Shown piece after piece: positions 287 through 6,516 of a stretch of DNA of 6,516 bases. The stretch covers positions 1-6,516 of IMG/VR virus record IMGVR_UViG_3300029319_006019. One strand, given 5' to 3'. Both the position numbers and the translations under genes were made by a program. Within the stretch, counting starts at the first letter, position 1. Each line of letters starts with the position of its first letter. The notes beneath the pieces are model-generated. The model worked only from the letters and a program-made list of their open reading frames with translations. It ran no database searches and was not told the DNA's origin.

Positions 287-329
287 GGGATGGGGCCCTG
301 GACCTTCCCGTTCCTCCCAGGGTCGGCGC

Positions 330-390
330 GGGCGGCGTCGAGAGCAAGTCAGGCTCCTGCACCCCTGGCATGCACCCGCCCACTTTTTTT
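330..390 (+). terminator. Possible intrinsic terminator or structured 3' end
   Basis: GGGCGG (330-335) pairs with CCGCCC (376-381), followed by T7 at 384-390. The enclosed 40 nt is long for a canonical terminator but contains a small stem (GAGC 342-345 / GCTC 353-356). Confidence 0.4.
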
Positions 391-407
391 AACCACTGGT
401 ACCCAAC

Positions 408-436
408 TTGCCCGATTCACTAAATCGTGGTATGTA
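408..436 (+). promoter_or_regulatory. Putative sigma70-type promoter P1
   Basis: TTGCCC (408-413), 17-nt spacer, TATGTA (431-436), with extended -10 TG at 428-429. It lies just after the T-tract and upstream of SD GAGGAG (449-454). The -10 lacks the final conserved T. Confidence 0.5.
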
Positions 437-460
437 GGGCACACAACCGAGGAGACTTCA

Positions 461-937: not shown

Positions 938-1447
938 GTGTCATTTGAACTCGAAATATCGGAAGCAGACGGGGGACACGCAGTCTACCTGGCTGCCCGG
1001 CACGATCCTCGCCTACAGGGGAAGCTGAAAACAACCTCTAATGGCAAACTAAGTCACAACGGAAACAAGCTGGATGAGGAGGGTTTGGCCAACATATCCG
1101 TCTATTTGACGGGTAAGTACGGCATTCGCCCCACGAGGTGGGAGCTTTACTCTGGCCTTGTTGCCGCAGCGGCATCATCTCCGAGGGCCCCTCGGAAGAA
1201 AAGAGAGACCCACATTGAGAAGGATTATTTTGATGCTATCGCCAAGTGGCTGGAAGAGAATGCAAACCGAAACGATGGCACCATGATTACGACGGGCCGC
1301 ATAGGAGAGGCCATCGACCCAGAAGGGATGCTGAAATCCAGAAGAGCGGCTGAGATGAAGATTGCCGCCGCGCTGAGGAAGATGGGCTACAAGTCAAAAC
1401 GAATGATGATCAACGGGACTCGCCAGTATCGGTGGTTCCCGTCCTGA
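938..1447 (+). CDS. VapE-related protein lacking the ATPase domain (N-terminal domain plus C-terminal winged-helix-like domain), 169 aa
   Basis: GTG start with SD AAGGAG about 6 nt upstream. Both halves align by eye to the two ends of the 3615-4946 protein (ISVYLTGKYGIR vs ISLWIDATYGIK; RAAEMKIAAALRKMGYKSKR...RQYRW vs RHAEIRVAEILRELGFKKDR...RVYVW). No Walker A or B motif. Confidence 0.8.
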   Translation: MSFELEISEADGGHAVYLAARHDPRLQGKLKTTSNGKLSHNGNKLDEEGLANISVYLTGKYGIRPTRWELYSGLVAAAASSPRAPRKKRETHIEKDYFDAIAKWLEENANRNDGTMITTGRIGEAIDPEGMLKSRRAAEMKIAAALRKMGYKSKRMMINGTRQYRWFPS

Positions 1448-1461
1448 CCAACAAAACAATC

Positions 1462-1490
1462 TTGCACTGGTTGGGCAGACCAGTTAAGAT
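1462..1490 (+). promoter_or_regulatory. Putative sigma70-type promoter P2 with an operator-like inverted repeat in the spacer
   Basis: TTGCAC (1462-1467), 17-nt spacer, TAAGAT (1485-1490), with an A-rich tract upstream (ACAAAACAAT). Inverted repeat ACTGGT (1466-1471) - 7 nt - ACCAGT (1479-1484). Confidence 0.7.
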
Positions 1491-1589
1491 TCCAAAACCA
1501 CCGGGGGTTCCTGTTACCCTTTAGGACCCAGCAGGGAGGCATGTGGGTGGTGAAATAGATGTCTCAACCAACCAAAGGAGAGCGATACC

Positions 1590-2087
1590 ATGGAAGATTT
1601 GAACTTTACTCCAGAAGAGATGCTGGCCATCATGAAGACCATTTCGACCAAAGAGGTCGAGGCAGCCAAGAGCGCCATTGCCAACGACTCACAAGCTGAG
1701 ATCGATATGACTGTGCGCATCAAGGGGCTGCTGAAGCGAGGCAATGCGTTCTCTTCAAAAGGAACGAGCCGCATCCCGTGGAAGGTAGCGATAGCTTTGC
1801 TGCTCAAGCGGTCAGGTGTGACTGGGCCAGGCTCCATCGAACTTCTCACTGAGGCCATTCGAGATGCTGCCTCAATGAACAAGGACGCGCGGGAAAAGCT
1901 GCTCAACGAGCACGGCGTTGGGGATGCTCTTCAGGTCGTGAACAAGGAGCTTTGCGAGAAGATTCCCAGGATCCAAAAGAACGGAAACATCACGTTCGTG
2001 CCTCAAGTGCGAGAAGTGGTCTGTGCGCCGGTCTTGGTTCCTGATGAAGATGAACACAACGCCTCAGAAACAGAGGCAGCCAAGTAA
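1590..2087 (+). CDS. Hypothetical protein, 165 aa, with an acidic C-terminal tail
   Basis: SD AAGGAG (1575-1580) before ATG 1590, protein-like composition, ends PDEDEHNASETEAAK. Family not recognised. Confidence 0.85.
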   Translation: MEDLNFTPEEMLAIMKTISTKEVEAAKSAIANDSQAEIDMTVRIKGLLKRGNAFSSKGTSRIPWKVAIALLLKRSGVTGPGSIELLTEAIRDAASMNKDAREKLLNEHGVGDALQVVNKELCEKIPRIQKNGNITFVPQVREVVCAPVLVPDEDEHNASETEAAK

Positions 2088-2097
2088 AGGGGAACCA

Positions 2098-2409
2098 ATG
2101 GCAAAGGGAAGACGACAACCGCCAGAGCTTCGTGTGGACACATACGATGCTCTCGCAAGCCTGGTGCGGGCCTTGGGAGGCAAGGTCCGGCCAGCCGCTA
2201 AGATTCTTGAGACCGGGTATTCGCATCTCTGGCAGCAAATGAACCACAAGCGACCACCGCCGACCGTAGACTCCCTGGCTCTGTATGCCAATCGAGTCTA
2301 CGCAAACACAGGGTTGAAGATGGTTCTTACAATCACGCCTGACATGCGGCTCTACTACTCAATCTCATGTGAAGACAACCAAACCGAGGGCGTTGTCCTT
2401 GGACCTTGA
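2098..2409 (+). CDS. XRE/Cro-like helix-turn-helix DNA-binding protein, 103 aa (start revised from 2023 to ATG 2098)
   Basis: AAGGGG SD-like element right after the upstream stop. VRPAAKILETGYSHLWQQMNHKRPPPTVDSLALYANRV follows the XRE pattern (helix-turn-recognition helix, N-x-K-R-x-P-(S/T), then a helix), followed by a beta-like GLKMVLTI. Confidence 0.72.
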   Translation: MAKGRRQPPELRVDTYDALASLVRALGGKVRPAAKILETGYSHLWQQMNHKRPPPTVDSLALYANRVYANTGLKMVLTITPDMRLYYSISCEDNQTEGVVLGP

Positions 2410-2436
2410 TTCAAGTTGGTAGATCAAGTATCTACC
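2406..2436 (+). promoter_or_regulatory. Putative promoter P3 overlapped by two palindromes
   Basis: TTGATT (2406-2411), 17-nt spacer, TATCTA (2429-2434). Palindromes CTTGA-T-TCAAG (2405-2415) and GGTAGAT-caagt-ATCTACC (2418-2436). The predicted start near 2440 coincides with the start of the structured leader. Confidence 0.45.
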
Positions 2437-2561
2437 TACAGCCCGCCAAGGCTGATCCCCTTGGCACTCCTTCGGGAGGACAGGGCTCCTGGTCAGGCCA
2501 CCCAGAGTGCCCCGCGCTTTGGGTGGCCGCATCAGGACCCCGTGGGCTTACGACCAGGAGC
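2437..2561 (+). ncRNA. Structured cis-regulatory leader RNA upstream of the primase (family not recognised)
   Basis: Stems GCCAAGG/CCTTGGC (2445-2451/2459-2465), CTCC-TTCG-GGAG with a cUUCGg tetraloop (2467-2478), a 15-bp stem with G-U pairs (2496-2510/2514-2528), a closing stem AGCCC/GGGCT (2440-2444/2544-2548), and a 10-bp anti-SD/SD pairing (2485-2494/2552-2561). Confidence 0.62.
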
Positions 2562-2565
2562 AGAG

Positions 2566-3606
2566 ATGTGGATACAACAAGCAAAGGAGCTTCCCGTCCT
2601 TCAGGCGGCGAAAGCTCTTGGGCTACAAAAACGCCGTGGACGTTCTCTGGGCCCATGCCCAGCATGCAACTCAGAGACTCGCGGAACCGATGACAACCGA
2701 GGCCCAATTGGAGTAAGCGGCTCCCAGTTGGCTTGGAAGTGTCATCGCTGCGGAATCAAGGGGGATGTCGTCGACCTGGCATCCTTTCGGCTGCATGAGT
2801 TGCCCTTTAGAGAGCTACCGTCTGGCAGACAGCTTGAAGTGCGCACATGGTTCGCAGAGCAAGGCGCATGCCCAAAGCCAGGCGAAACCCGAGTTCCACA
2901 AGGGCTTGAGCACAAGAAAACCCTTCTGCGGGTGGTCGAGGACGGATATCGCCGCCCGCCCCAGCAAGAACTACATGACCTCTGGCGAACTACTTGCTCG
3001 TTTGAAAAGTCGCTAAACGACGACCCAGAGTGGGCAGACCCCATGGCAACGTGGTTGCTGCGCAGAAAGTTTGCCCCGTTGATGCTGGACCAATGCAAGG
3101 CCGCTCGCGTGCTGCCTCCTCCAGGCCGAGTTCAAATGCCAGAGTGGTGGAGAAAGGAGTGGCTTCCCAACTACCGGATAGCTGTTCCCGTCTATGAACC
3201 AGACGGCACATTTGCCAGCATTCACGCAAGAAGCGTAGCTGTACCAGAGATCACACCTAAGACACGATGGCCATATCGATATGAAGCCAGCGAGTTGGTC
3301 ATGGCCAACCCAAACGCTGTCCGCATGATGCGAGGCCAGAAGGTCCCTGGGTTGACCGGCCTGTTAATCTGTGAGGGCCTTACTGATTTCATTCGAGCGT
3401 GCTGTTCAGCACACGCAGAAGAAATGACGATTGCCATCGTCGCTGCGGCCTCGGGTGGCTTTAGAGCAATCCCAAAAATCCAAATTCCCAAACCAATCAA
3501 AATCTACATTGCGACCGACCCTGACGACCGAGGAGACGAATACGCCACAGTGATTGCTGATGGCCTACCCGACCACAAGGTTTACCGAGTCCCGCTGGAG
3601 GCCTAA
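2566..3606 (+). CDS. DnaG-type DNA primase (C4 zinc ribbon + TOPRIM), 346 aa; start revised from TTG 2416 to ATG 2566
   Basis: SD AGGAG (2556-2560) 5 nt before ATG. Zinc motif CPAC-x24-CHRC followed by GIKGDVVDL, TOPRIM motifs LLICEGLTDF and IYIATDPDDRG, and an IHARS segment in the polymerase subdomain. The final D-x-D/N motif is absent before the stop. Confidence 0.9.
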   Translation: MWIQQAKELPVLQAAKALGLQKRRGRSLGPCPACNSETRGTDDNRGPIGVSGSQLAWKCHRCGIKGDVVDLASFRLHELPFRELPSGRQLEVRTWFAEQGACPKPGETRVPQGLEHKKTLLRVVEDGYRRPPQQELHDLWRTTCSFEKSLNDDPEWADPMATWLLRRKFAPLMLDQCKAARVLPPPGRVQMPEWWRKEWLPNYRIAVPVYEPDGTFASIHARSVAVPEITPKTRWPYRYEASELVMANPNAVRMMRGQKVPGLTGLLICEGLTDFIRACCSAHAEEMTIAIVAAASGGFRAIPKIQIPKPIKIYIATDPDDRGDEYATVIADGLPDHKVYRVPLEA

Positions 3607-3614
3607 AACAGAAA

Positions 3615-4946
3615 ATGCCTGACATCGACGGAACGCTGCGCGGAGAGAAGACCTCACTAACGAACTTGCTGAAGATTGCTGAAGCCAAAGGAGACCTGAA
3701 TGAAGATGAAGAAGAGCAACTGGACAGGCATCAACCAGACCCGATTGTGCTGCCTCAACTTGAGCAGTACCGAGACAAGCAGGGGAATCTCACCGGAGTG
3801 CCCAAGCAGTCGCGAAACAACCTGTACAAGATTTTAAGCCTGGACCGTCGATACAAGAACAGCATTTGGGAAAACCTGTTCGACGGCTCTTTGTACCTGA
3901 AAGACGACGAGTACAAGGACACGGACGACACGAAGATATCTTTGTGGATTGATGCGACATACGGCATCAAGTTTGCCGACAACACGGTGGCTGGCATTGC
4001 CAAGCTTATAGGCGAAGAAAACGGGATTAACCCGCTCCAAGAGTGGCTCAAGAGCTTGAAGTGGGATGGAGTCAAGCGCACAGACGATTGGCTTATCCGA
4101 GCGACTGGTTGTGAAGATACTGAGTTGAACCGGATGATGGGCAACAAGTGGCTCATTCAAGCAATAGCCCGCGCAATGAAGCCCGGCGCGAAGGCCGACT
4201 GTGTCTTGATCTTGATTGGACCGCAAGGCGCACGGAAGAGCAGTCTGCTCAGGACCTTGGCTACCGAGCAGTTTTTTTCGGATACGCCTCTCGATATTGG
4301 TTCAGCCAATGCCTACACGCAGATTCAAAGAGCCTGGATCTACGAGGTAGCGGAGCTTGACTCTGTCAGGCGCTCAGCCAACTCAGCAACCAAGGCCTTC
4401 ATCAGTGCCCAGGAAGACACCTACAGGCCAGCGTATGGCCGCAGGGCAGTCACAATCAAGAGACACACCGTCTTTGCCGGAACCACGAACGACAGCCAGT
4501 TTATGAATGACTGGACGGGAAGTCGGCGGTACTGGCCAATCAAGGTGAAGAAGGTTGATCTGGACTGGGTTGCAGAGTTTCGTGACCAGCTTTGGGCTGA
4601 AGCCATCCTTGAGTACAACTCAGGCGCCACATGGTGGCTTGAACAGGAATGGGAGAAGGAGCGCGAAGAAGAAAGCGAGATCTTCCGGCAGGAGGACCCT
4701 TGGAGGGATGTCATCGTTCAGTATGCGCAAAACTACTACGGTGTGATCTCAACGCGAACCATTATGGAGGATGCGCTCAAGCTTGAGAAAAACCACATGA
4801 CTCGACACGCCGAGATTCGTGTGGCCGAGATTCTGCGAGAACTTGGATTTAAGAAGGACCGCAAGCGTGTGGGTGACAGCCGAGTCTATGTTTGGACGAA
4901 AACTAAAGTGATTGAACTAGATAAAACAGGTGATATCGATGAATGA
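3615..4946 (+). CDS. VapE/VirE (virulence-associated protein E) family P-loop ATPase, probable replicative helicase, 443 aa
   Basis: Family-typical WDGVKR, ARAMKPGAKADCVLILIGPQGARKS (Walker A, nt 4218-4241), WIYEVAELD (Walker B), KAFISAQEDTYRPAYGR, FAGTTN, DWTGSRRYWPI, RDQLWAEA and EDPW, then a C-terminal winged-helix-like region. Confidence 0.92.
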   Translation: MPDIDGTLRGEKTSLTNLLKIAEAKGDLNEDEEEQLDRHQPDPIVLPQLEQYRDKQGNLTGVPKQSRNNLYKILSLDRRYKNSIWENLFDGSLYLKDDEYKDTDDTKISLWIDATYGIKFADNTVAGIAKLIGEENGINPLQEWLKSLKWDGVKRTDDWLIRATGCEDTELNRMMGNKWLIQAIARAMKPGAKADCVLILIGPQGARKSSLLRTLATEQFFSDTPLDIGSANAYTQIQRAWIYEVAELDSVRRSANSATKAFISAQEDTYRPAYGRRAVTIKRHTVFAGTTNDSQFMNDWTGSRRYWPIKVKKVDLDWVAEFRDQLWAEAILEYNSGATWWLEQEWEKEREEESEIFRQEDPWRDVIVQYAQNYYGVISTRTIMEDALKLEKNHMTRHAEIRVAEILRELGFKKDRKRVGDSRVYVWTKTKVIELDKTGDIDE

Positions 4947-6318
4947 TGTATGTGTGATTGCAGGAGCGTACTACTTTCCACCGGGAAATAAAGTCGCGGC
5001 CAAACTTTCAAAGTCCTACAGCCTTCCCAACCCTGACTACCGAATGGCTCAAGGCCTACGAAATCGTGGGAAGTGGGTGCAAATGCCGCCCGAACGAGTC
5101 AGCGCATGCCAGGAAATTCCATTCGAGCACCCCTGGGGTGGCGGCATGGCGATTCCTCGTAACGCAAATCTTGATGGGAGCGGCCTCAAGGTAATCGACA
5201 AGCGAACGTACCCAGTAGTCAAAGATCCGTTGACGCCCGTTGGTGGATACAACCTTCGCTCTTACCAGGAAGACGCGCTTGGCGAGTGGATTAAGGCCGG
5301 ACAAGAAGGAGTCATCATTGCTCCATGTGGCGCCGGAAAGACCACCATTGGCATTTTCGCCATCACAGCTTGTGAAACCAAGACGCTAATCCTGGTACAC
5401 ACCAACGACCTTGCTGAGCAGTGGACAAACCGAATCGACACCACTCTTGATGGCTGCACCACCAGCGTCTATGGAGGAGGCAAGAGAGACGACTCAGGCC
5501 GCGTTGTAGTTGCTACATTCCAGACGCTTGACCGAATGTCTTGGGTTGAGCGCTATGAGTGGGCAAAGCAGTTCGGGCTCTGCATTGTTGACGAGTGTCA
5601 CCACGTTCCGGCTGAGATGTTTAGCCGAGTGATGATGACGATTCCAGCAAAACACCGGCTCGGGCTAACGGCTACCCCGCGCAGACAAGATGGCCTTACA
5701 TCGATGCTCTGGTGGCATCTCGGACCAGCCGTCTACGAGATTACCAATGCAGACCTGGCCAAAGACGGGCATGTTTTGCCACCGAAAGTAGAGTGGTTGA
5801 TGACCGACTGGACGGGGCCTAAAGGACAAATGGACTGGCCAAAGCTCGTGAATGAGATGGCTGCAAACATGTACCGAAATGAACGCATCATTAGCCGAAT
5901 AGTTCGAGCGATTGAAGATGGTCGACAAGTCCTTGTTCTTTCTGATCGAGTCAACCATTGCTCGCTTATGGCTCAAGAGCTTCGACTTCGTGGATACACC
6001 GCCGAGCCGCTGGTTGGTCGTATGACAAAGAAGCAGCGCGCCGAAACTTTGGACGCTGCCAGGAATAGGCAAATACAGGTAGTCTGCGCCACGACGCTTG
6101 CAGATGAGGGCCTTGATCTTCCATCGCTTGATACGGTTGTTCTGACAACGCCGACCAAGGCTTTGGCGCGCATTCAGCAGCGAATCGGACGGGTAATGCG
6201 GCCACACCCAGACAAGAAGCCCCCTCTTGTCATTGATGTGGTTGATGACATCGGGTCAATGCGCGGACTCGCCAAGAAGCGAATGAAGCTGTACACTCGT
6301 ATTGGATGTACGTGGTAG
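4939..6318 (+). CDS. Superfamily 2 DExH-box helicase (UvsW/XPB/ResIII-like), about 459 aa
   Basis: Q motif LRSYQ, I APCGAGKT, Ia LVHTNDLAEQW, Ib VATFQTL, II DECHH, III LTATP, V LADEGLDLP, VI QRIGRVMR. ATG 4939 (SD-like AGGTGA 4928-4933, ATGAATGA overlap with the upstream stop) is preferred over GTG 4930. Confidence 0.93.
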   Translation: MNDVCVIAGAYYFPPGNKVAAKLSKSYSLPNPDYRMAQGLRNRGKWVQMPPERVSACQEIPFEHPWGGGMAIPRNANLDGSGLKVIDKRTYPVVKDPLTPVGGYNLRSYQEDALGEWIKAGQEGVIIAPCGAGKTTIGIFAITACETKTLILVHTNDLAEQWTNRIDTTLDGCTTSVYGGGKRDDSGRVVVATFQTLDRMSWVERYEWAKQFGLCIVDECHHVPAEMFSRVMMTIPAKHRLGLTATPRRQDGLTSMLWWHLGPAVYEITNADLAKDGHVLPPKVEWLMTDWTGPKGQMDWPKLVNEMAANMYRNERIISRIVRAIEDGRQVLVLSDRVNHCSLMAQELRLRGYTAEPLVGRMTKKQRAETLDAARNRQIQVVCATTLADEGLDLPSLDTVVLTTPTKALARIQQRIGRVMRPHPDKKPPLVIDVVDDIGSMRGLAKKRMKLYTRIGCTW

Positions 6319-6321
6319 ACC

Positions 6322-6516
6322 ATGCAGACGCTTCTTGAAAGGCTCCCAGACGGCTGGCTCTTGATCTATACCGAGGGCCTTTGGACTGTATTGGATGAAG
6401 ATGGCGAAACCGTGCTTAACGGCGCAACTCCACGACAAGTCGAAGACGGGTTGATGATTGAAGCAGGACTTCAGCAAGCGTTTATAGCAATGCAGATTGC
6501 AATGTCATCAACGCCT
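6322..6516 (+). CDS. 5' part of a hypothetical protein (partial, runs off the right edge)
   Basis: ATG 3 nt after the helicase stop, open to the window end: MQTLLERLPDGWLLIYTEGLWTVLDEDGETVLNGATPRQVEDGLMIEAGLQQAFIAMQIAMSSTP... Confidence 0.65.
   Translation, partial: MQTLLERLPDGWLLIYTEGLWTVLDEDGETVLNGATPRQVEDGLMIEAGLQQAFIAMQIAMSSTP

What the first reader, a model, noticed from the sequence alone, without database searches (positions are those of the whole stretch)
938..6318. Possible multi-layer replication-control system around a TOPRIM primase-VapE-SF2 helicase module
Seen in sequence: a truncated helicase paralog, an XRE-like regulator directly upstream of a palindrome-covered promoter, an RNA-switch-like leader and an apparently split primase all converge on one operon. 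Established: VapE ATPases are commonly associated with AEP/PrimPol primases in phages, whereas here the partner is a DnaG-type TOPRIM primase with a C4 zinc ribbon (not the CHC2 of cellular DnaG). Inference: a replicon under tight copy control, as expected of a plasmid-like prophage or a satellite.
Basis: inference. Interest (0 to 1): 0.6.

Follow-up and report, generated by a model that had tools for sequence, protein, structure and literature searches.

The report
Marine phage replication operon with structured leader
This is the replication gene block of an uncultured ~74 kb marine tailed phage, not a plasmid or satellite: the genes are of known kinds, but a conserved folded leader ahead of the primase gene and a motor-less copy of the helicase appear to be new.

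Summary
The genes are real and mostly correctly named. On the + strand lie:
- g169 (938-1447)
- g165 (1590-2087)
- g103 (2098-2409), with an XRE-type fold
- a 156-nt folded spacer (2410-2565)
- one intact DnaG/T4/T7-type primase (2566-3606) with a C4 zinc ribbon and a TOPRIM domain
- a VapE helicase like the SaPI Rep helicase-initiator (3615-4946)
- an XPB/RadD-like SF2 helicase (4930-6318)

This order recurs in about 80-90 marine viral contigs.

- **Primase:** it is not split.
- **g169:** it shares the C-terminal domain of VapE (profile-profile E 1e-11) but has no ATPase.
- **Spacer:** the fold is conserved with covariation. It has an invariant TGATC hairpin loop and a helix pairing with the primase ribosome-binding site. 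It matches no Rfam family.
- **Replicon type:** five relatives are complete 72-75 kb genomes without a tyrosine integrase. The one inventoried has a terminase and head genes but no partition genes. The plasmid-prophage or satellite reading is therefore not supported.
- **TOPRIM with VapE:** this pairing is already in the literature, usually as a fusion. Here the two are separate, and a complex model docks VapE residues 1-30 on the TOPRIM domain.

Verdict: a new variant of a known kind, of moderate interest. No control function has been tested.

The parts
938..1447 (+). g169: conserved 169-aa protein. It has an N-terminal domain, a basic linker, and a C-terminal domain homologous to the VapE C-terminal domain (the origin-binding winged helix in SaPI Rep). 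It has no P-loop.
   Evidence: BLASTP against VapE gives E 1e-5. hhalign gives probability 97.4%, E 1e-11, for residues 98-169 against VapE 366-437. The N-terminal domain matches only weakly. Family alignment. Present in 78 of 90 loci. Relatives occur only in marine viral contigs.
1590..2087 (+). g165: conserved 165-aa protein of unknown function.
   Evidence: No Pfam, PHROG or NCBIfam hit. The Atlas search gave no usable hit. Present in 65 of 90 loci, always between g169 and g103.
2098..2409 (+). g103: small XRE-fold helix-turn-helix protein with a C-terminal beta-hairpin, placed directly upstream of the leader.
   Evidence: AF2 pLDDT 83, four helices plus two strands. Top Foldseek matches are XRE-family proteins: DdrO, CapH, ClgR, SinR and C.Esp1396I. 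Immediately upstream of the primase in 88 of 90 loci. Alignment.
2410..2565 (+). Conserved structured leader between g103 and the primase gene.
   Evidence: Folding z-score -5.2. Spacers of 80-194 nt (most 105-194) with comparably stable folds occur in nearly all relatives. A covariance model built from other clades finds window 2420-2574 at E 0.003 and no second copy in a complete genome. Pair counts. No Rfam match.
2418..2436 (+). P0: small hairpin just after the g103 stop codon (7-bp stem, 5-nt loop).
   Evidence: Inverted repeat I10. Relatives carry a hairpin of different sequence at this position.
2441..2486 (+). P2 region. GCCC (2441-2444) pairs with GGGC (2483-2486). The P2 stem is 2445-2451 with 2459-2465. 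The loop 2452-2458 holds the invariant TGATC (2453-2457). A clade-specific small hairpin, P3, lies at 2467-2478.
   Evidence: TGATC is invariant in all 46 distinct sequences. Six of the 7 P2 pairs show changes on both sides.
2485..2561 (+). Long hairpin. The outer helix pairs 2485-2494 (contains CUCC) with 2552-2561 (contains the AGGAG ribosome-binding site). The inner P4 stem is 2496-2510 with 2514-2528. A look-alike of the ribosome-binding site lies at 2531-2539 and gives an alternative pairing.
   Evidence: Inverted repeats I1 and I6. Five of 7 outer-helix pairs change on both sides and 94.9% of cells are paired. Alternative minimum-energy folds in close relatives. Opening the ribosome-binding site costs only 2.7 kcal/mol in the window.
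2566..3606 (+). DnaG/T4 gp61/T7 gp4-type primase in one polypeptide. C4 zinc ribbon (C31, C34, C59, C62), RNA-polymerase subdomain, TOPRIM (E270, D274, D318, D320). It has no helicase-binding C-terminal domain.
3615..4946 (+). VapE/VirE-type SF3 helicase-initiator. Walker A at 202-209, Walker B around 241-249, C-terminal domain around 366-437. The conserved N-terminal 30 residues are predicted to dock on the primase.
   Evidence: PF05272 at E 1e-76. PDB 7pds (SaPI Rep) at E 4e-58. Invariant columns. Complex model.
4930..6318 (+). SF2 helicase, XPB/RadD-like, with motifs I, II (DECH), III and VI. Its start overlaps the end of the VapE gene; an ATG at 4939 is an alternative start.
   Evidence: ResIII at E 7e-30 and Helicase_C at E 2e-19. 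XPB model at E 2e-43, below its cut-off. phrog_16. Adjacent to VapE in most loci and moved 3-7 kb upstream in one clade.
6322..6516 (+). g68: conserved small protein (68-71 aa in nearly all relatives), cut by the end of the window. Function unknown.

Best explanation
The region 938-6318 is the early replication operon of an uncultured marine tailed phage whose relatives have genomes of about 72-75 kb.

**Shown**
- The gene order g169, g165, g103, leader, primase, VapE, SF2 helicase, g68 is conserved. In relatives it is followed by a YqaJ exonuclease, RecT and an HNH protein.

**Inferred from family knowledge**
- VapE is the initiator and replicative SF3 helicase. By analogy with SaPI Rep, a hexamer binds the origin through its C-terminal winged helix, melts it and loads itself.
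- VapE recruits the separately encoded DnaG-type primase. A model supports docking of the VapE N-terminal tail (residues 1-30) on the TOPRIM domain. This non-covalent contact would replace the covalent Toprim-VapE fusion seen in other phages.
- No phage DNA polymerase was found in a complete relative, so DNA synthesis would be done by the host polymerase.
- The SF2 helicase, with YqaJ/RecT, would serve fork remodelling or recombination-dependent replication.

**Possible control layers, all inferred**
1. The 156-nt leader folds, most likely as mRNA, so that a CUCC-containing strand pairs with the primase ribosome-binding site. An almost equally stable alternative pairing frees the site. The invariant UGAUC hairpin loop is the likely docking site for a trans-acting factor that sets primase translation, as in the T4 gene 43 and gene 32 translational operators.
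2. g169 has the VapE end domains but no motor. It would bind the same DNA or partners as VapE and so modulate initiation.
3. g103 is an XRE-fold DNA-binding protein of unknown target.
For: - **Synteny:**
- **Phage context:**
- **Primase identity:**
- **VapE as Rep-like helicase-initiator:** (PMC9371898).
- **Fusion precedent:**
- **Primase-VapE contact:** ipSAE 0.67 against a best control of 0.02. That mark was reached by 58 of 80 solved complexes and 2 of 110 mismatched pairs. The three runs share at least 92% of contacts, and the partner's pLDDT is at least 80.
- **g169 domain homology:**
- **g103 fold:**
- **Leader structure:**
  - On a structure-blind MAFFT alignment, 90.2% of cells pair against 83.6% in shuffles (0 of 500 shuffles reach it).
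  - Nineteen pairs change on both sides against 10.9 expected.
  - Slid controls pair at 40-53%.
- **Leader conservation and strand:**
  - There is one + strand copy per genome.
  - Spacer nucleotide identity is 72%, against 66-72% for the flanking genes.
  - G-U cells outnumber A-C cells 50 to 23.
Against: - No function was tested, and no RNA data exist for this sequence.
- Opening the primase ribosome-binding site costs about 6 kcal/mol on average and 2.7 in the window. That is no more than for neighbouring genes, so strong sequestration is not shown.
- The sense strand folds only slightly better than the antisense strand (-60.3 against -58.8 kcal/mol, p 0.04).
- The helix to the start codon varies on one side only.
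- The g103 fold matches have weak E-values (about 0.06).
- The g169 N-terminal homology is weak.
- No origin or iterons were located.
- The whole-genome content comes from relatives with 38-50% primase identity, not from the window's own genome.
Confidence: 0.7

Rival explanations
1. One reading: a replicon under tight copy control that belongs to a plasmid-like prophage or a phage satellite.
For: The layout of an XRE-type protein, a primase, a Rep-like helicase and a paralogue resembles SaPI/PICI replication modules. The components co-occur.
Against: - The window is about 9% of a genome.
- Five relatives of 72-75 kb are rated complete and lack PF00589.
- G001 has a terminase, a head protein and virion proteins, and no Par or recombinase families.
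Confidence: 0.07
2. The folded spacer acts as DNA, not RNA. It would be an origin or a single-strand hairpin signal for loading the primase or helicase, placed next to the replication genes.
For: - Origins often lie beside rep genes; the SaPI ori lies next to rep.
- Sense and antisense fold almost equally well.
- The loop motif is invariant.
- There is one copy per genome.
Against: - There are no iterons and no AT-rich stretch. Spacer GC is mostly 0.51-0.64, up to 0.70.
- One helix specifically covaries with the ribosome-binding site just upstream of the start codon.
- G-U cells outnumber A-C cells.
- One clade has only a 36-37 nt spacer.
Confidence: 0.15
3. The leader is an RNA element without a switch: an RNase III-type processing or stability hairpin between cistrons, as in T7 early mRNAs.
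For: There is a long, imperfect hairpin with an internal loop between genes. The cost of opening the ribosome-binding site is not raised.
Against: The invariant 5-nt loop and the conserved alternative pairing with a look-alike of the ribosome-binding site are not needed for a cleavage site.
Confidence: 0.2
4. g169 is a decaying remnant of a duplicated VapE gene and has no function.
For: It lacks the ATPase core.
Against: Across clades it keeps an open frame of mostly 167-175 aa (up to about 250 aa in the most distant clades). It has 14 invariant and 10 nearly invariant columns at 26-49% identity.
Confidence: 0.03

Closest known systems
SaPI/PICI pri-rep-ori modules (Rep self-loading SF3 helicase-initiators; PDB 7pds; PMC9371898)
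   Same: A primase gene lies directly upstream of a VapE-type hexameric SF3 helicase with a C-terminal DNA-binding domain. The window's VapE matches the 7pds chain at E 4e-58.
   Different: Here the module sits in a virion-encoding phage lineage of about 74 kb. No iteron origin was found next to the helicase gene. An extra ATPase-less paralogue and an SF2 helicase are present.
Fused Toprim-VirE/VapE primase-helicases of phages (Kazlauskas et al. 2016, PMC4889955; Marinobacter phage PS3 ORF43)
   Same: A DnaG-type TOPRIM primase is combined with a VapE SF3 helicase.
   Different: Here they are two genes 8 nt apart. A modelled contact between the VapE N-terminal tail and the TOPRIM domain takes the place of the covalent link. 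The primase is too diverged to reach any Pfam model.
Primase-VapE fusion plus SNF2-type helicase modules of cultured siphophages (Croceibacter P2559Y, Bacteroides BF503P2, Staphylococcus phiSP15-1)
   Same: A VapE helicase is followed within about 1 kb by an SF2 helicase of about 450-460 aa.
   Different: Their SF2 helicase is SNF2-type, whereas this one is ResIII/XPB-like. Their N-terminal primase parts match no Toprim model. They have no leader and no g169 equivalent among the annotated genes.
T4 gp61 and the T7 gp4 primase domain
   Same: C4 zinc ribbon, RNA-polymerase subdomain and TOPRIM domain.
   Different: Those primases work with DnaB-family SF4 helicases (my own knowledge). This one is paired with an SF3 VapE helicase.
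Autogenous translational operators of phage replication genes (T4 gene 43, gene 32, RegA targets; my own knowledge)
   Same: A conserved hairpin lies next to the ribosome-binding site of a replication gene.
   Different: No binding protein is known here. The element is larger (105-195 nt) and has a second long hairpin and alternative pairings. It is not in Rfam.
Origin-binding-domain-only paralogues such as HSV-1 OBPC (UL8.5) (my own knowledge)
   Same: A protein carries the DNA-binding end of the initiator-helicase without the motor.
   Different: g169 is a separate gene, not an internal product of a larger one. DNA binding has not been tested.

Membership tests
DnaG-type (TOPRIM) primase, phage T4/T7 subtype | N-terminal zinc ribbon with four ligands | tested here: met
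   C31 (invariant), C34 (in at least 90% of sequences), C59 and C62 (both invariant) in 24 family members. The ribbon aligns with that of T4 gp61.
DnaG-type (TOPRIM) primase, phage T4/T7 subtype | TOPRIM acidic residues (E, then DxD) and the RNA-polymerase-domain fold | tested here: met
   E270, D274, D318 and D320 are invariant. Foldseek matches DnaG cores, T4 gp61 and T7 gp4 at E 5e-8 to 1e-3. Homologues carry PF13155.
DnaG-type (TOPRIM) primase, phage T4/T7 subtype | Primer synthesis activity | not testable with these tools
   Needs biochemistry.
Cellular DnaG | C-terminal DnaB-binding domain and CHC2 zinc finger | tested here: not met
   The protein ends about 25 residues after the DxD motif. 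The ribbon is C4. It has no Pfam zf-CHC2 hit.
VapE/VirE SF3 helicase (PF05272; SaPI Rep-like) | Family profile match above cut-off, with Walker A and Walker B motifs | tested here: met
   257.6 bits against a cut-off of 25. G202, G205, K208, S209 and E244, E247, D249 are invariant. PDB 7pds matches at E 4e-58.
VapE/VirE SF3 helicase (PF05272; SaPI Rep-like) | Hexamer; origin binding through the C-terminal winged helix | not tested
   Inferred from SaPI Rep. The 7pds match covers only profile positions 58-374, so the C-terminal domain itself was not matched.
SF2 helicase (XPB/RadD-like) | Two RecA-like domains with motifs I, II, III and VI | tested here: met
   ResIII and Helicase_C are above their cut-offs. 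The motifs are visible in the translation.
SF2 helicase (XPB/RadD-like) | Equivalog-level membership in XPB or RadD | tested here: not met
   149 bits against a cut-off of 610 for XPB, and 94 bits against 720 for RadD.
XRE-family HTH regulator | Helical helix-turn-helix fold of the XRE type | tested here: inconclusive
   The top 10 Foldseek matches are XRE-family proteins at probability 0.90-0.98 (nine of them at 0.95 or more), but E is about 0.06 and TM-score 0.4-0.6. There is no Pfam HTH_3 hit at E 0.01. The best HTH entry in the PDB profile search has E 0.32.
Riboswitch or translational operator | Conserved structure with covariation in a 5' leader, on the gene's own strand | tested here: met
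Riboswitch or translational operator | A defined ligand or protein, and a change in expression on binding | not testable with these tools
   No Rfam family matches. No RNA runs were found. The energy estimate is not decisive.
Phage satellite (PICI/SaPI/P4-like) | Small element (under about 20 kb) with an integrase and no full virion gene set | tested here: not met
   Relatives are complete at 72-75 kb and have no PF00589. G001 has a terminase, a head protein and virion proteins. This was tested on relatives only.
Plasmid prophage (P1/N15-like) | Partition genes (ParA/ParB) and a plasmid-type maintenance module | tested here: not met
   No such Pfam family is among the 15 families found in 73 early-region ORFs of G001. 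This was tested on one relative.

The most novel reading that the evidence does not exclude
The spacer 2410-2565 is a new class of cis-regulatory RNA, with an invariant UGAUC loop hairpin and a bistable helix over the ribosome-binding site. Through it a phage factor (the primase itself, g103 or g169) would set primase translation. The ATPase-less VapE paralogue g169 would gate origin firing. Together they would form a true multi-layer replication control in an abundant, probably virulent, marine phage lineage.
Probability: 0.3. Interest if true: 0.65.

Novelty: new variant of a known kind. Interest (0 to 1): 0.45.

Why it matters
Replication modules built on VapE-type helicases are very common in phages and mobile elements, yet little studied outside SaPIs. 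This lineage is found in marine, estuary and seawater metagenomes from nine studies. It offers three directly testable things.
- **A natural split of the Toprim-VapE fusion.** The predicted tether, VapE residues 1-30 on the TOPRIM domain, can be tested by pull-down.
- **A motor-less paralogue of the initiator-helicase.** It could show how such helicases are held in check.
- **A covarying leader structure absent from Rfam.** It would add a replication-gene operator to the short list of known phage translational control elements.

None of this overturns current views, and the module itself is ordinary.

Tried and rejected
- **Family scans:** Pfam, PHROGs and NCBIfam found nothing for g55, g150, g169, g165, g103 and g68.
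- **Rfam:** a search at E up to 1 gave nothing.
- **tRNA scan:** none found.
- **Promoter and terminator scan:** counts were at chance level, and no + strand promoter was found.
- **Cultured phages:** tblastn with the primase gave no match. The terminase of a relative is only about 27% identical to T4-like terminases, so no cultured relative could be named.
- **PDB profile searches:** nothing significant for g103 or g169.
- **Atlas searches:**
  - g165 gave no usable hit.
  - g169 gave only leads, including a DUF3874 cluster at 0.91, a score that chance hits reach in 4-10% of cases.
- **Iterons:** a k-mer cluster search in the window found none.
- **GATC content:** GATC is neither avoided nor enriched in a complete relative, with 350 observed against 353 expected. 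The invariant loop is therefore not explained by genome-wide GATC bias.
- **RNAalifold on the crude all-clade alignment:** it recovered only P2, so a subgroup alignment and a covariance model were needed.
- **Strand and accessibility tests:** the sense-versus-antisense energy test was only marginal. The cost of opening the ribosome-binding site was not raised. I therefore do not claim strong sequestration.
- **Sequencing runs:** no RNA run holds the sequence, so no reads were laid.
- **Not examined:** one distant primase homologue (P0044) lies in what looks like a bacterial contig next to a DnaB-like gene.

Full report
**What the window is.** The 6516-bp window is a whole IMG/VR virus record that CheckV rates at about 9% complete. 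All sizeable genes lie on the + strand with short gaps:
- g55 (119-286)
- g150 (461-913)
- g169 (938-1447)
- g165 (1590-2087)
- g103 (2098-2409)
- a 156-nt spacer (2410-2565)
- primase (2566-3606)
- VapE (3615-4946)
- SF2 helicase (4930-6318)
- the start of g68 (6322 onward)

No tRNA gene, no Rfam family and no above-chance promoter or terminator sites were found.

**The three enzymes**

*Primase*
- Pfam sees nothing in the primase. PHROGs calls it a DNA primase (phrog_47, E 2e-11).
- Fifty-four metagenomic homologues were found, 51 of them 313-432 aa long and colinear over about 89-100% of the query. Many carry Toprim_2.
- In an alignment of 24 of them, the ribbon cysteines C31, C59 and C62 are invariant and C34 is nearly so. 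E270, D274 and D318xD320 are invariant.
- The AF2 model (pLDDT 91.7) matches Aquifex and E. coli DnaG, T4 gp61, T7 gp4 and Twinkle (E 5e-8 to 1e-3).
- It is therefore one intact DnaG-type primase of the phage kind. The longer TTG-started frame from 2416 merely reads through the spacer.
- 'Split' holds only in the sense that primase and helicase are separate polypeptides.

*VapE*
- It matches PF05272 at E 1e-76.
- Its closest solved relative is PDB 7pds (E 4e-58). That entry comes from the study of SaPI Rep self-loading SF3 helicase-initiators. Their C-terminal winged helix binds origin iterons, and their gene follows a primase gene (PMC9371898).

*SF2 helicase*
- It has ResIII and Helicase_C domains. 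It resembles XPB and RadD but scores far below the cut-offs of those models.

**Is TOPRIM with VapE unusual?** No.
- Kazlauskas et al. [quoted passage not shown]
- I confirmed Toprim_3 plus VapE in Marinobacter phage PS3 ORF43.
- Cultured phages of Croceibacter, Bacteroides and Staphylococcus have a primase-VapE fusion followed by an SF2 helicase of about 450-460 aa.
- The novelty here is the unfused state. A complex model places VapE residues 1-30, a conserved tail, on the primase TOPRIM domain.
  - The ipSAE score is 0.67 against a best control of 0.02.
  - That mark was reached by 58 of 80 solved complexes and 2 of 110 mismatched pairs.
  - The runs agree in at least 92% of contacts, and the partner's pLDDT is at least 80.
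  - This supports binding but does not show it.

**Context in relatives**
- The primase is found in marine contigs in which the order g169, g165, g103, spacer, primase, VapE, SF2, g68, YqaJ, RecT, HNH recurs.
- Counts across 90 loci: primase 90, VapE 89, g103 88, SF2 79, g169 78, g165 65. Most of the misses are at contig ends.
- In one clade the SF2 helicase lies 3-7 kb upstream, together with SSB and Dam.
- Five relatives of 72-75 kb are rated 100% complete and have no tyrosine integrase.
- G001 (74,612 bp, with a 99-bp terminal overlap) encodes a large terminase, a major head protein, virion proteins and a 3434-aa ORF. It also encodes SSB, RusA, an ArdC-like protein and YqaJ/RecT.
- No Par, recombinase or DNA polymerase family was found in G001.
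- The lineage is therefore a full-size tailed phage that probably uses the host polymerase. It is not a satellite or a plasmid prophage. This rests on relatives with 38-50% primase identity.

**The small proteins**
- **g169** is a conserved family of about 170 aa.
  - Its C-terminal 72 residues are homologous to the C-terminal domain of VapE (BLASTP E 1e-5; hhalign probability 97.4%, E 1e-11).
  - Its N-terminal domain aligns colinearly but weakly with the VapE N-terminal domain (E 7e-4, probability 26%).
  - It lacks the ATPase, so it is a motor-less paralogue and not debris.
  - Its relatives are confined to this viral lineage.
- **g103** folds into four helices and a beta-hairpin (pLDDT 83). 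Its best structural matches are all XRE-family regulators, at weak E-values.
- **g165** remains unexplained.

**The spacer**
- It folds far better than shuffled sequence (z -5.2).
- Relatives keep a spacer of 80-194 nt (most 105-194) with comparably stable folds. The exception is one clade with 36-37 nt.
- Shared features:
  - a variable hairpin right after the g103 stop codon;
  - a hairpin (P2) whose stem covaries freely while its loop keeps TGATC in all 46 distinct sequences (window 2453-2457);
  - a long GC-rich hairpin (P4, 2496-2528);
  - an outer helix in which 2485-2494 pairs with 2552-2561, the stretch that holds the AGGAG ribosome-binding site.
- A covariance model built only from the 122-136 nt clade finds the window's element (2420-2574, E 0.003). 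It finds one + strand copy per locus and none elsewhere in a complete genome.
- On a structure-blind alignment, 90.2% of cells pair against 83.6% in shuffles (0 of 500). Nineteen pairs change on both sides against 10.9 expected. Slid controls pair at 40-53%. Five of the 7 outer-helix pairs covary.
- G-U cells outnumber A-C cells 50 to 23. The spacer is as conserved as the flanking genes.

**Limits of the spacer reading**
- The sense strand is only slightly more stable than the antisense strand.
- The ribosome-binding site is no harder to open than those of neighbouring genes, because an alternative pairing with a look-alike sequence (2531-2539) is almost equally stable.
- The proposed helix to the start codon varies on one side only.
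- No RNA data exist for this sequence.
- I read the element as an mRNA leader that tunes primase translation, possibly as a two-state element. An origin-type DNA role and a plain processing site are kept as rivals.

**Verdict**
- The replicon-type inference and the claimed oddity of the TOPRIM-VapE pairing are not supported.
- The enzymes form a known kind of phage replication module.
- The conserved leader, the motor-less paralogue and the split, tethered primase-helicase are new variants worth a bench test.

Noticed in passing
window 287-460: The spacer before g150 has a GC-rich stretch followed by a run of seven T (about 371-391). After it comes a TTGCCC, 17 nt, TATGTA promoter-like arrangement (about 408-436). 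This may be where the operon's transcript starts.
   Followed up: no
G001 (L093:7601-17905, minus strand): A complete 74.6 kb relative carries a single ORF of 3434 aa among the virion genes. No PHROG virion RNA polymerase family was reported for it at E 1e-5. An 'internal virion protein' family was hit somewhere in that gene set.
   Followed up: partly
G001, whole genome: No DNA polymerase family was found among the Pfam hits of the early region of a complete relative. This is despite a primase, two helicases, SSB, RusA and YqaJ/RecT. The phage probably relies on the host replicase.
   Followed up: partly
G001 early region; L007:17619-18725: Relatives encode an ArdC-like anti-restriction protein (ArdcN plus a zincin-like metallopeptidase) and a pair of DUF2589 proteins near the replication block.
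   Followed up: no
window 2452-2458 and 2567-2573: The invariant loop bases GAUCC could pair with GGAU in codons 2-3 of the primase gene (Trp-Ile, conserved), forming a 4-5 bp pseudoknot. This competes with the proposed CUACA / UGUGG helix.
   Followed up: no
protein P0044: A 32%-identical primase homologue lies on a 41.7 kb contig among cell-type genes (Omp85, TamB, a protein kinase), two genes away from a DnaB_C/AAA_25 gene. This branch of the family may pair with a different helicase.
   Followed up: no
L010:12294-12758; L011:8704-9219: Some relatives carry a phage-type Dam methyltransferase (PF05869) close to the module. GATC lies in the invariant leader loop, but GATC is not biased genome-wide.
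   Followed up: partly
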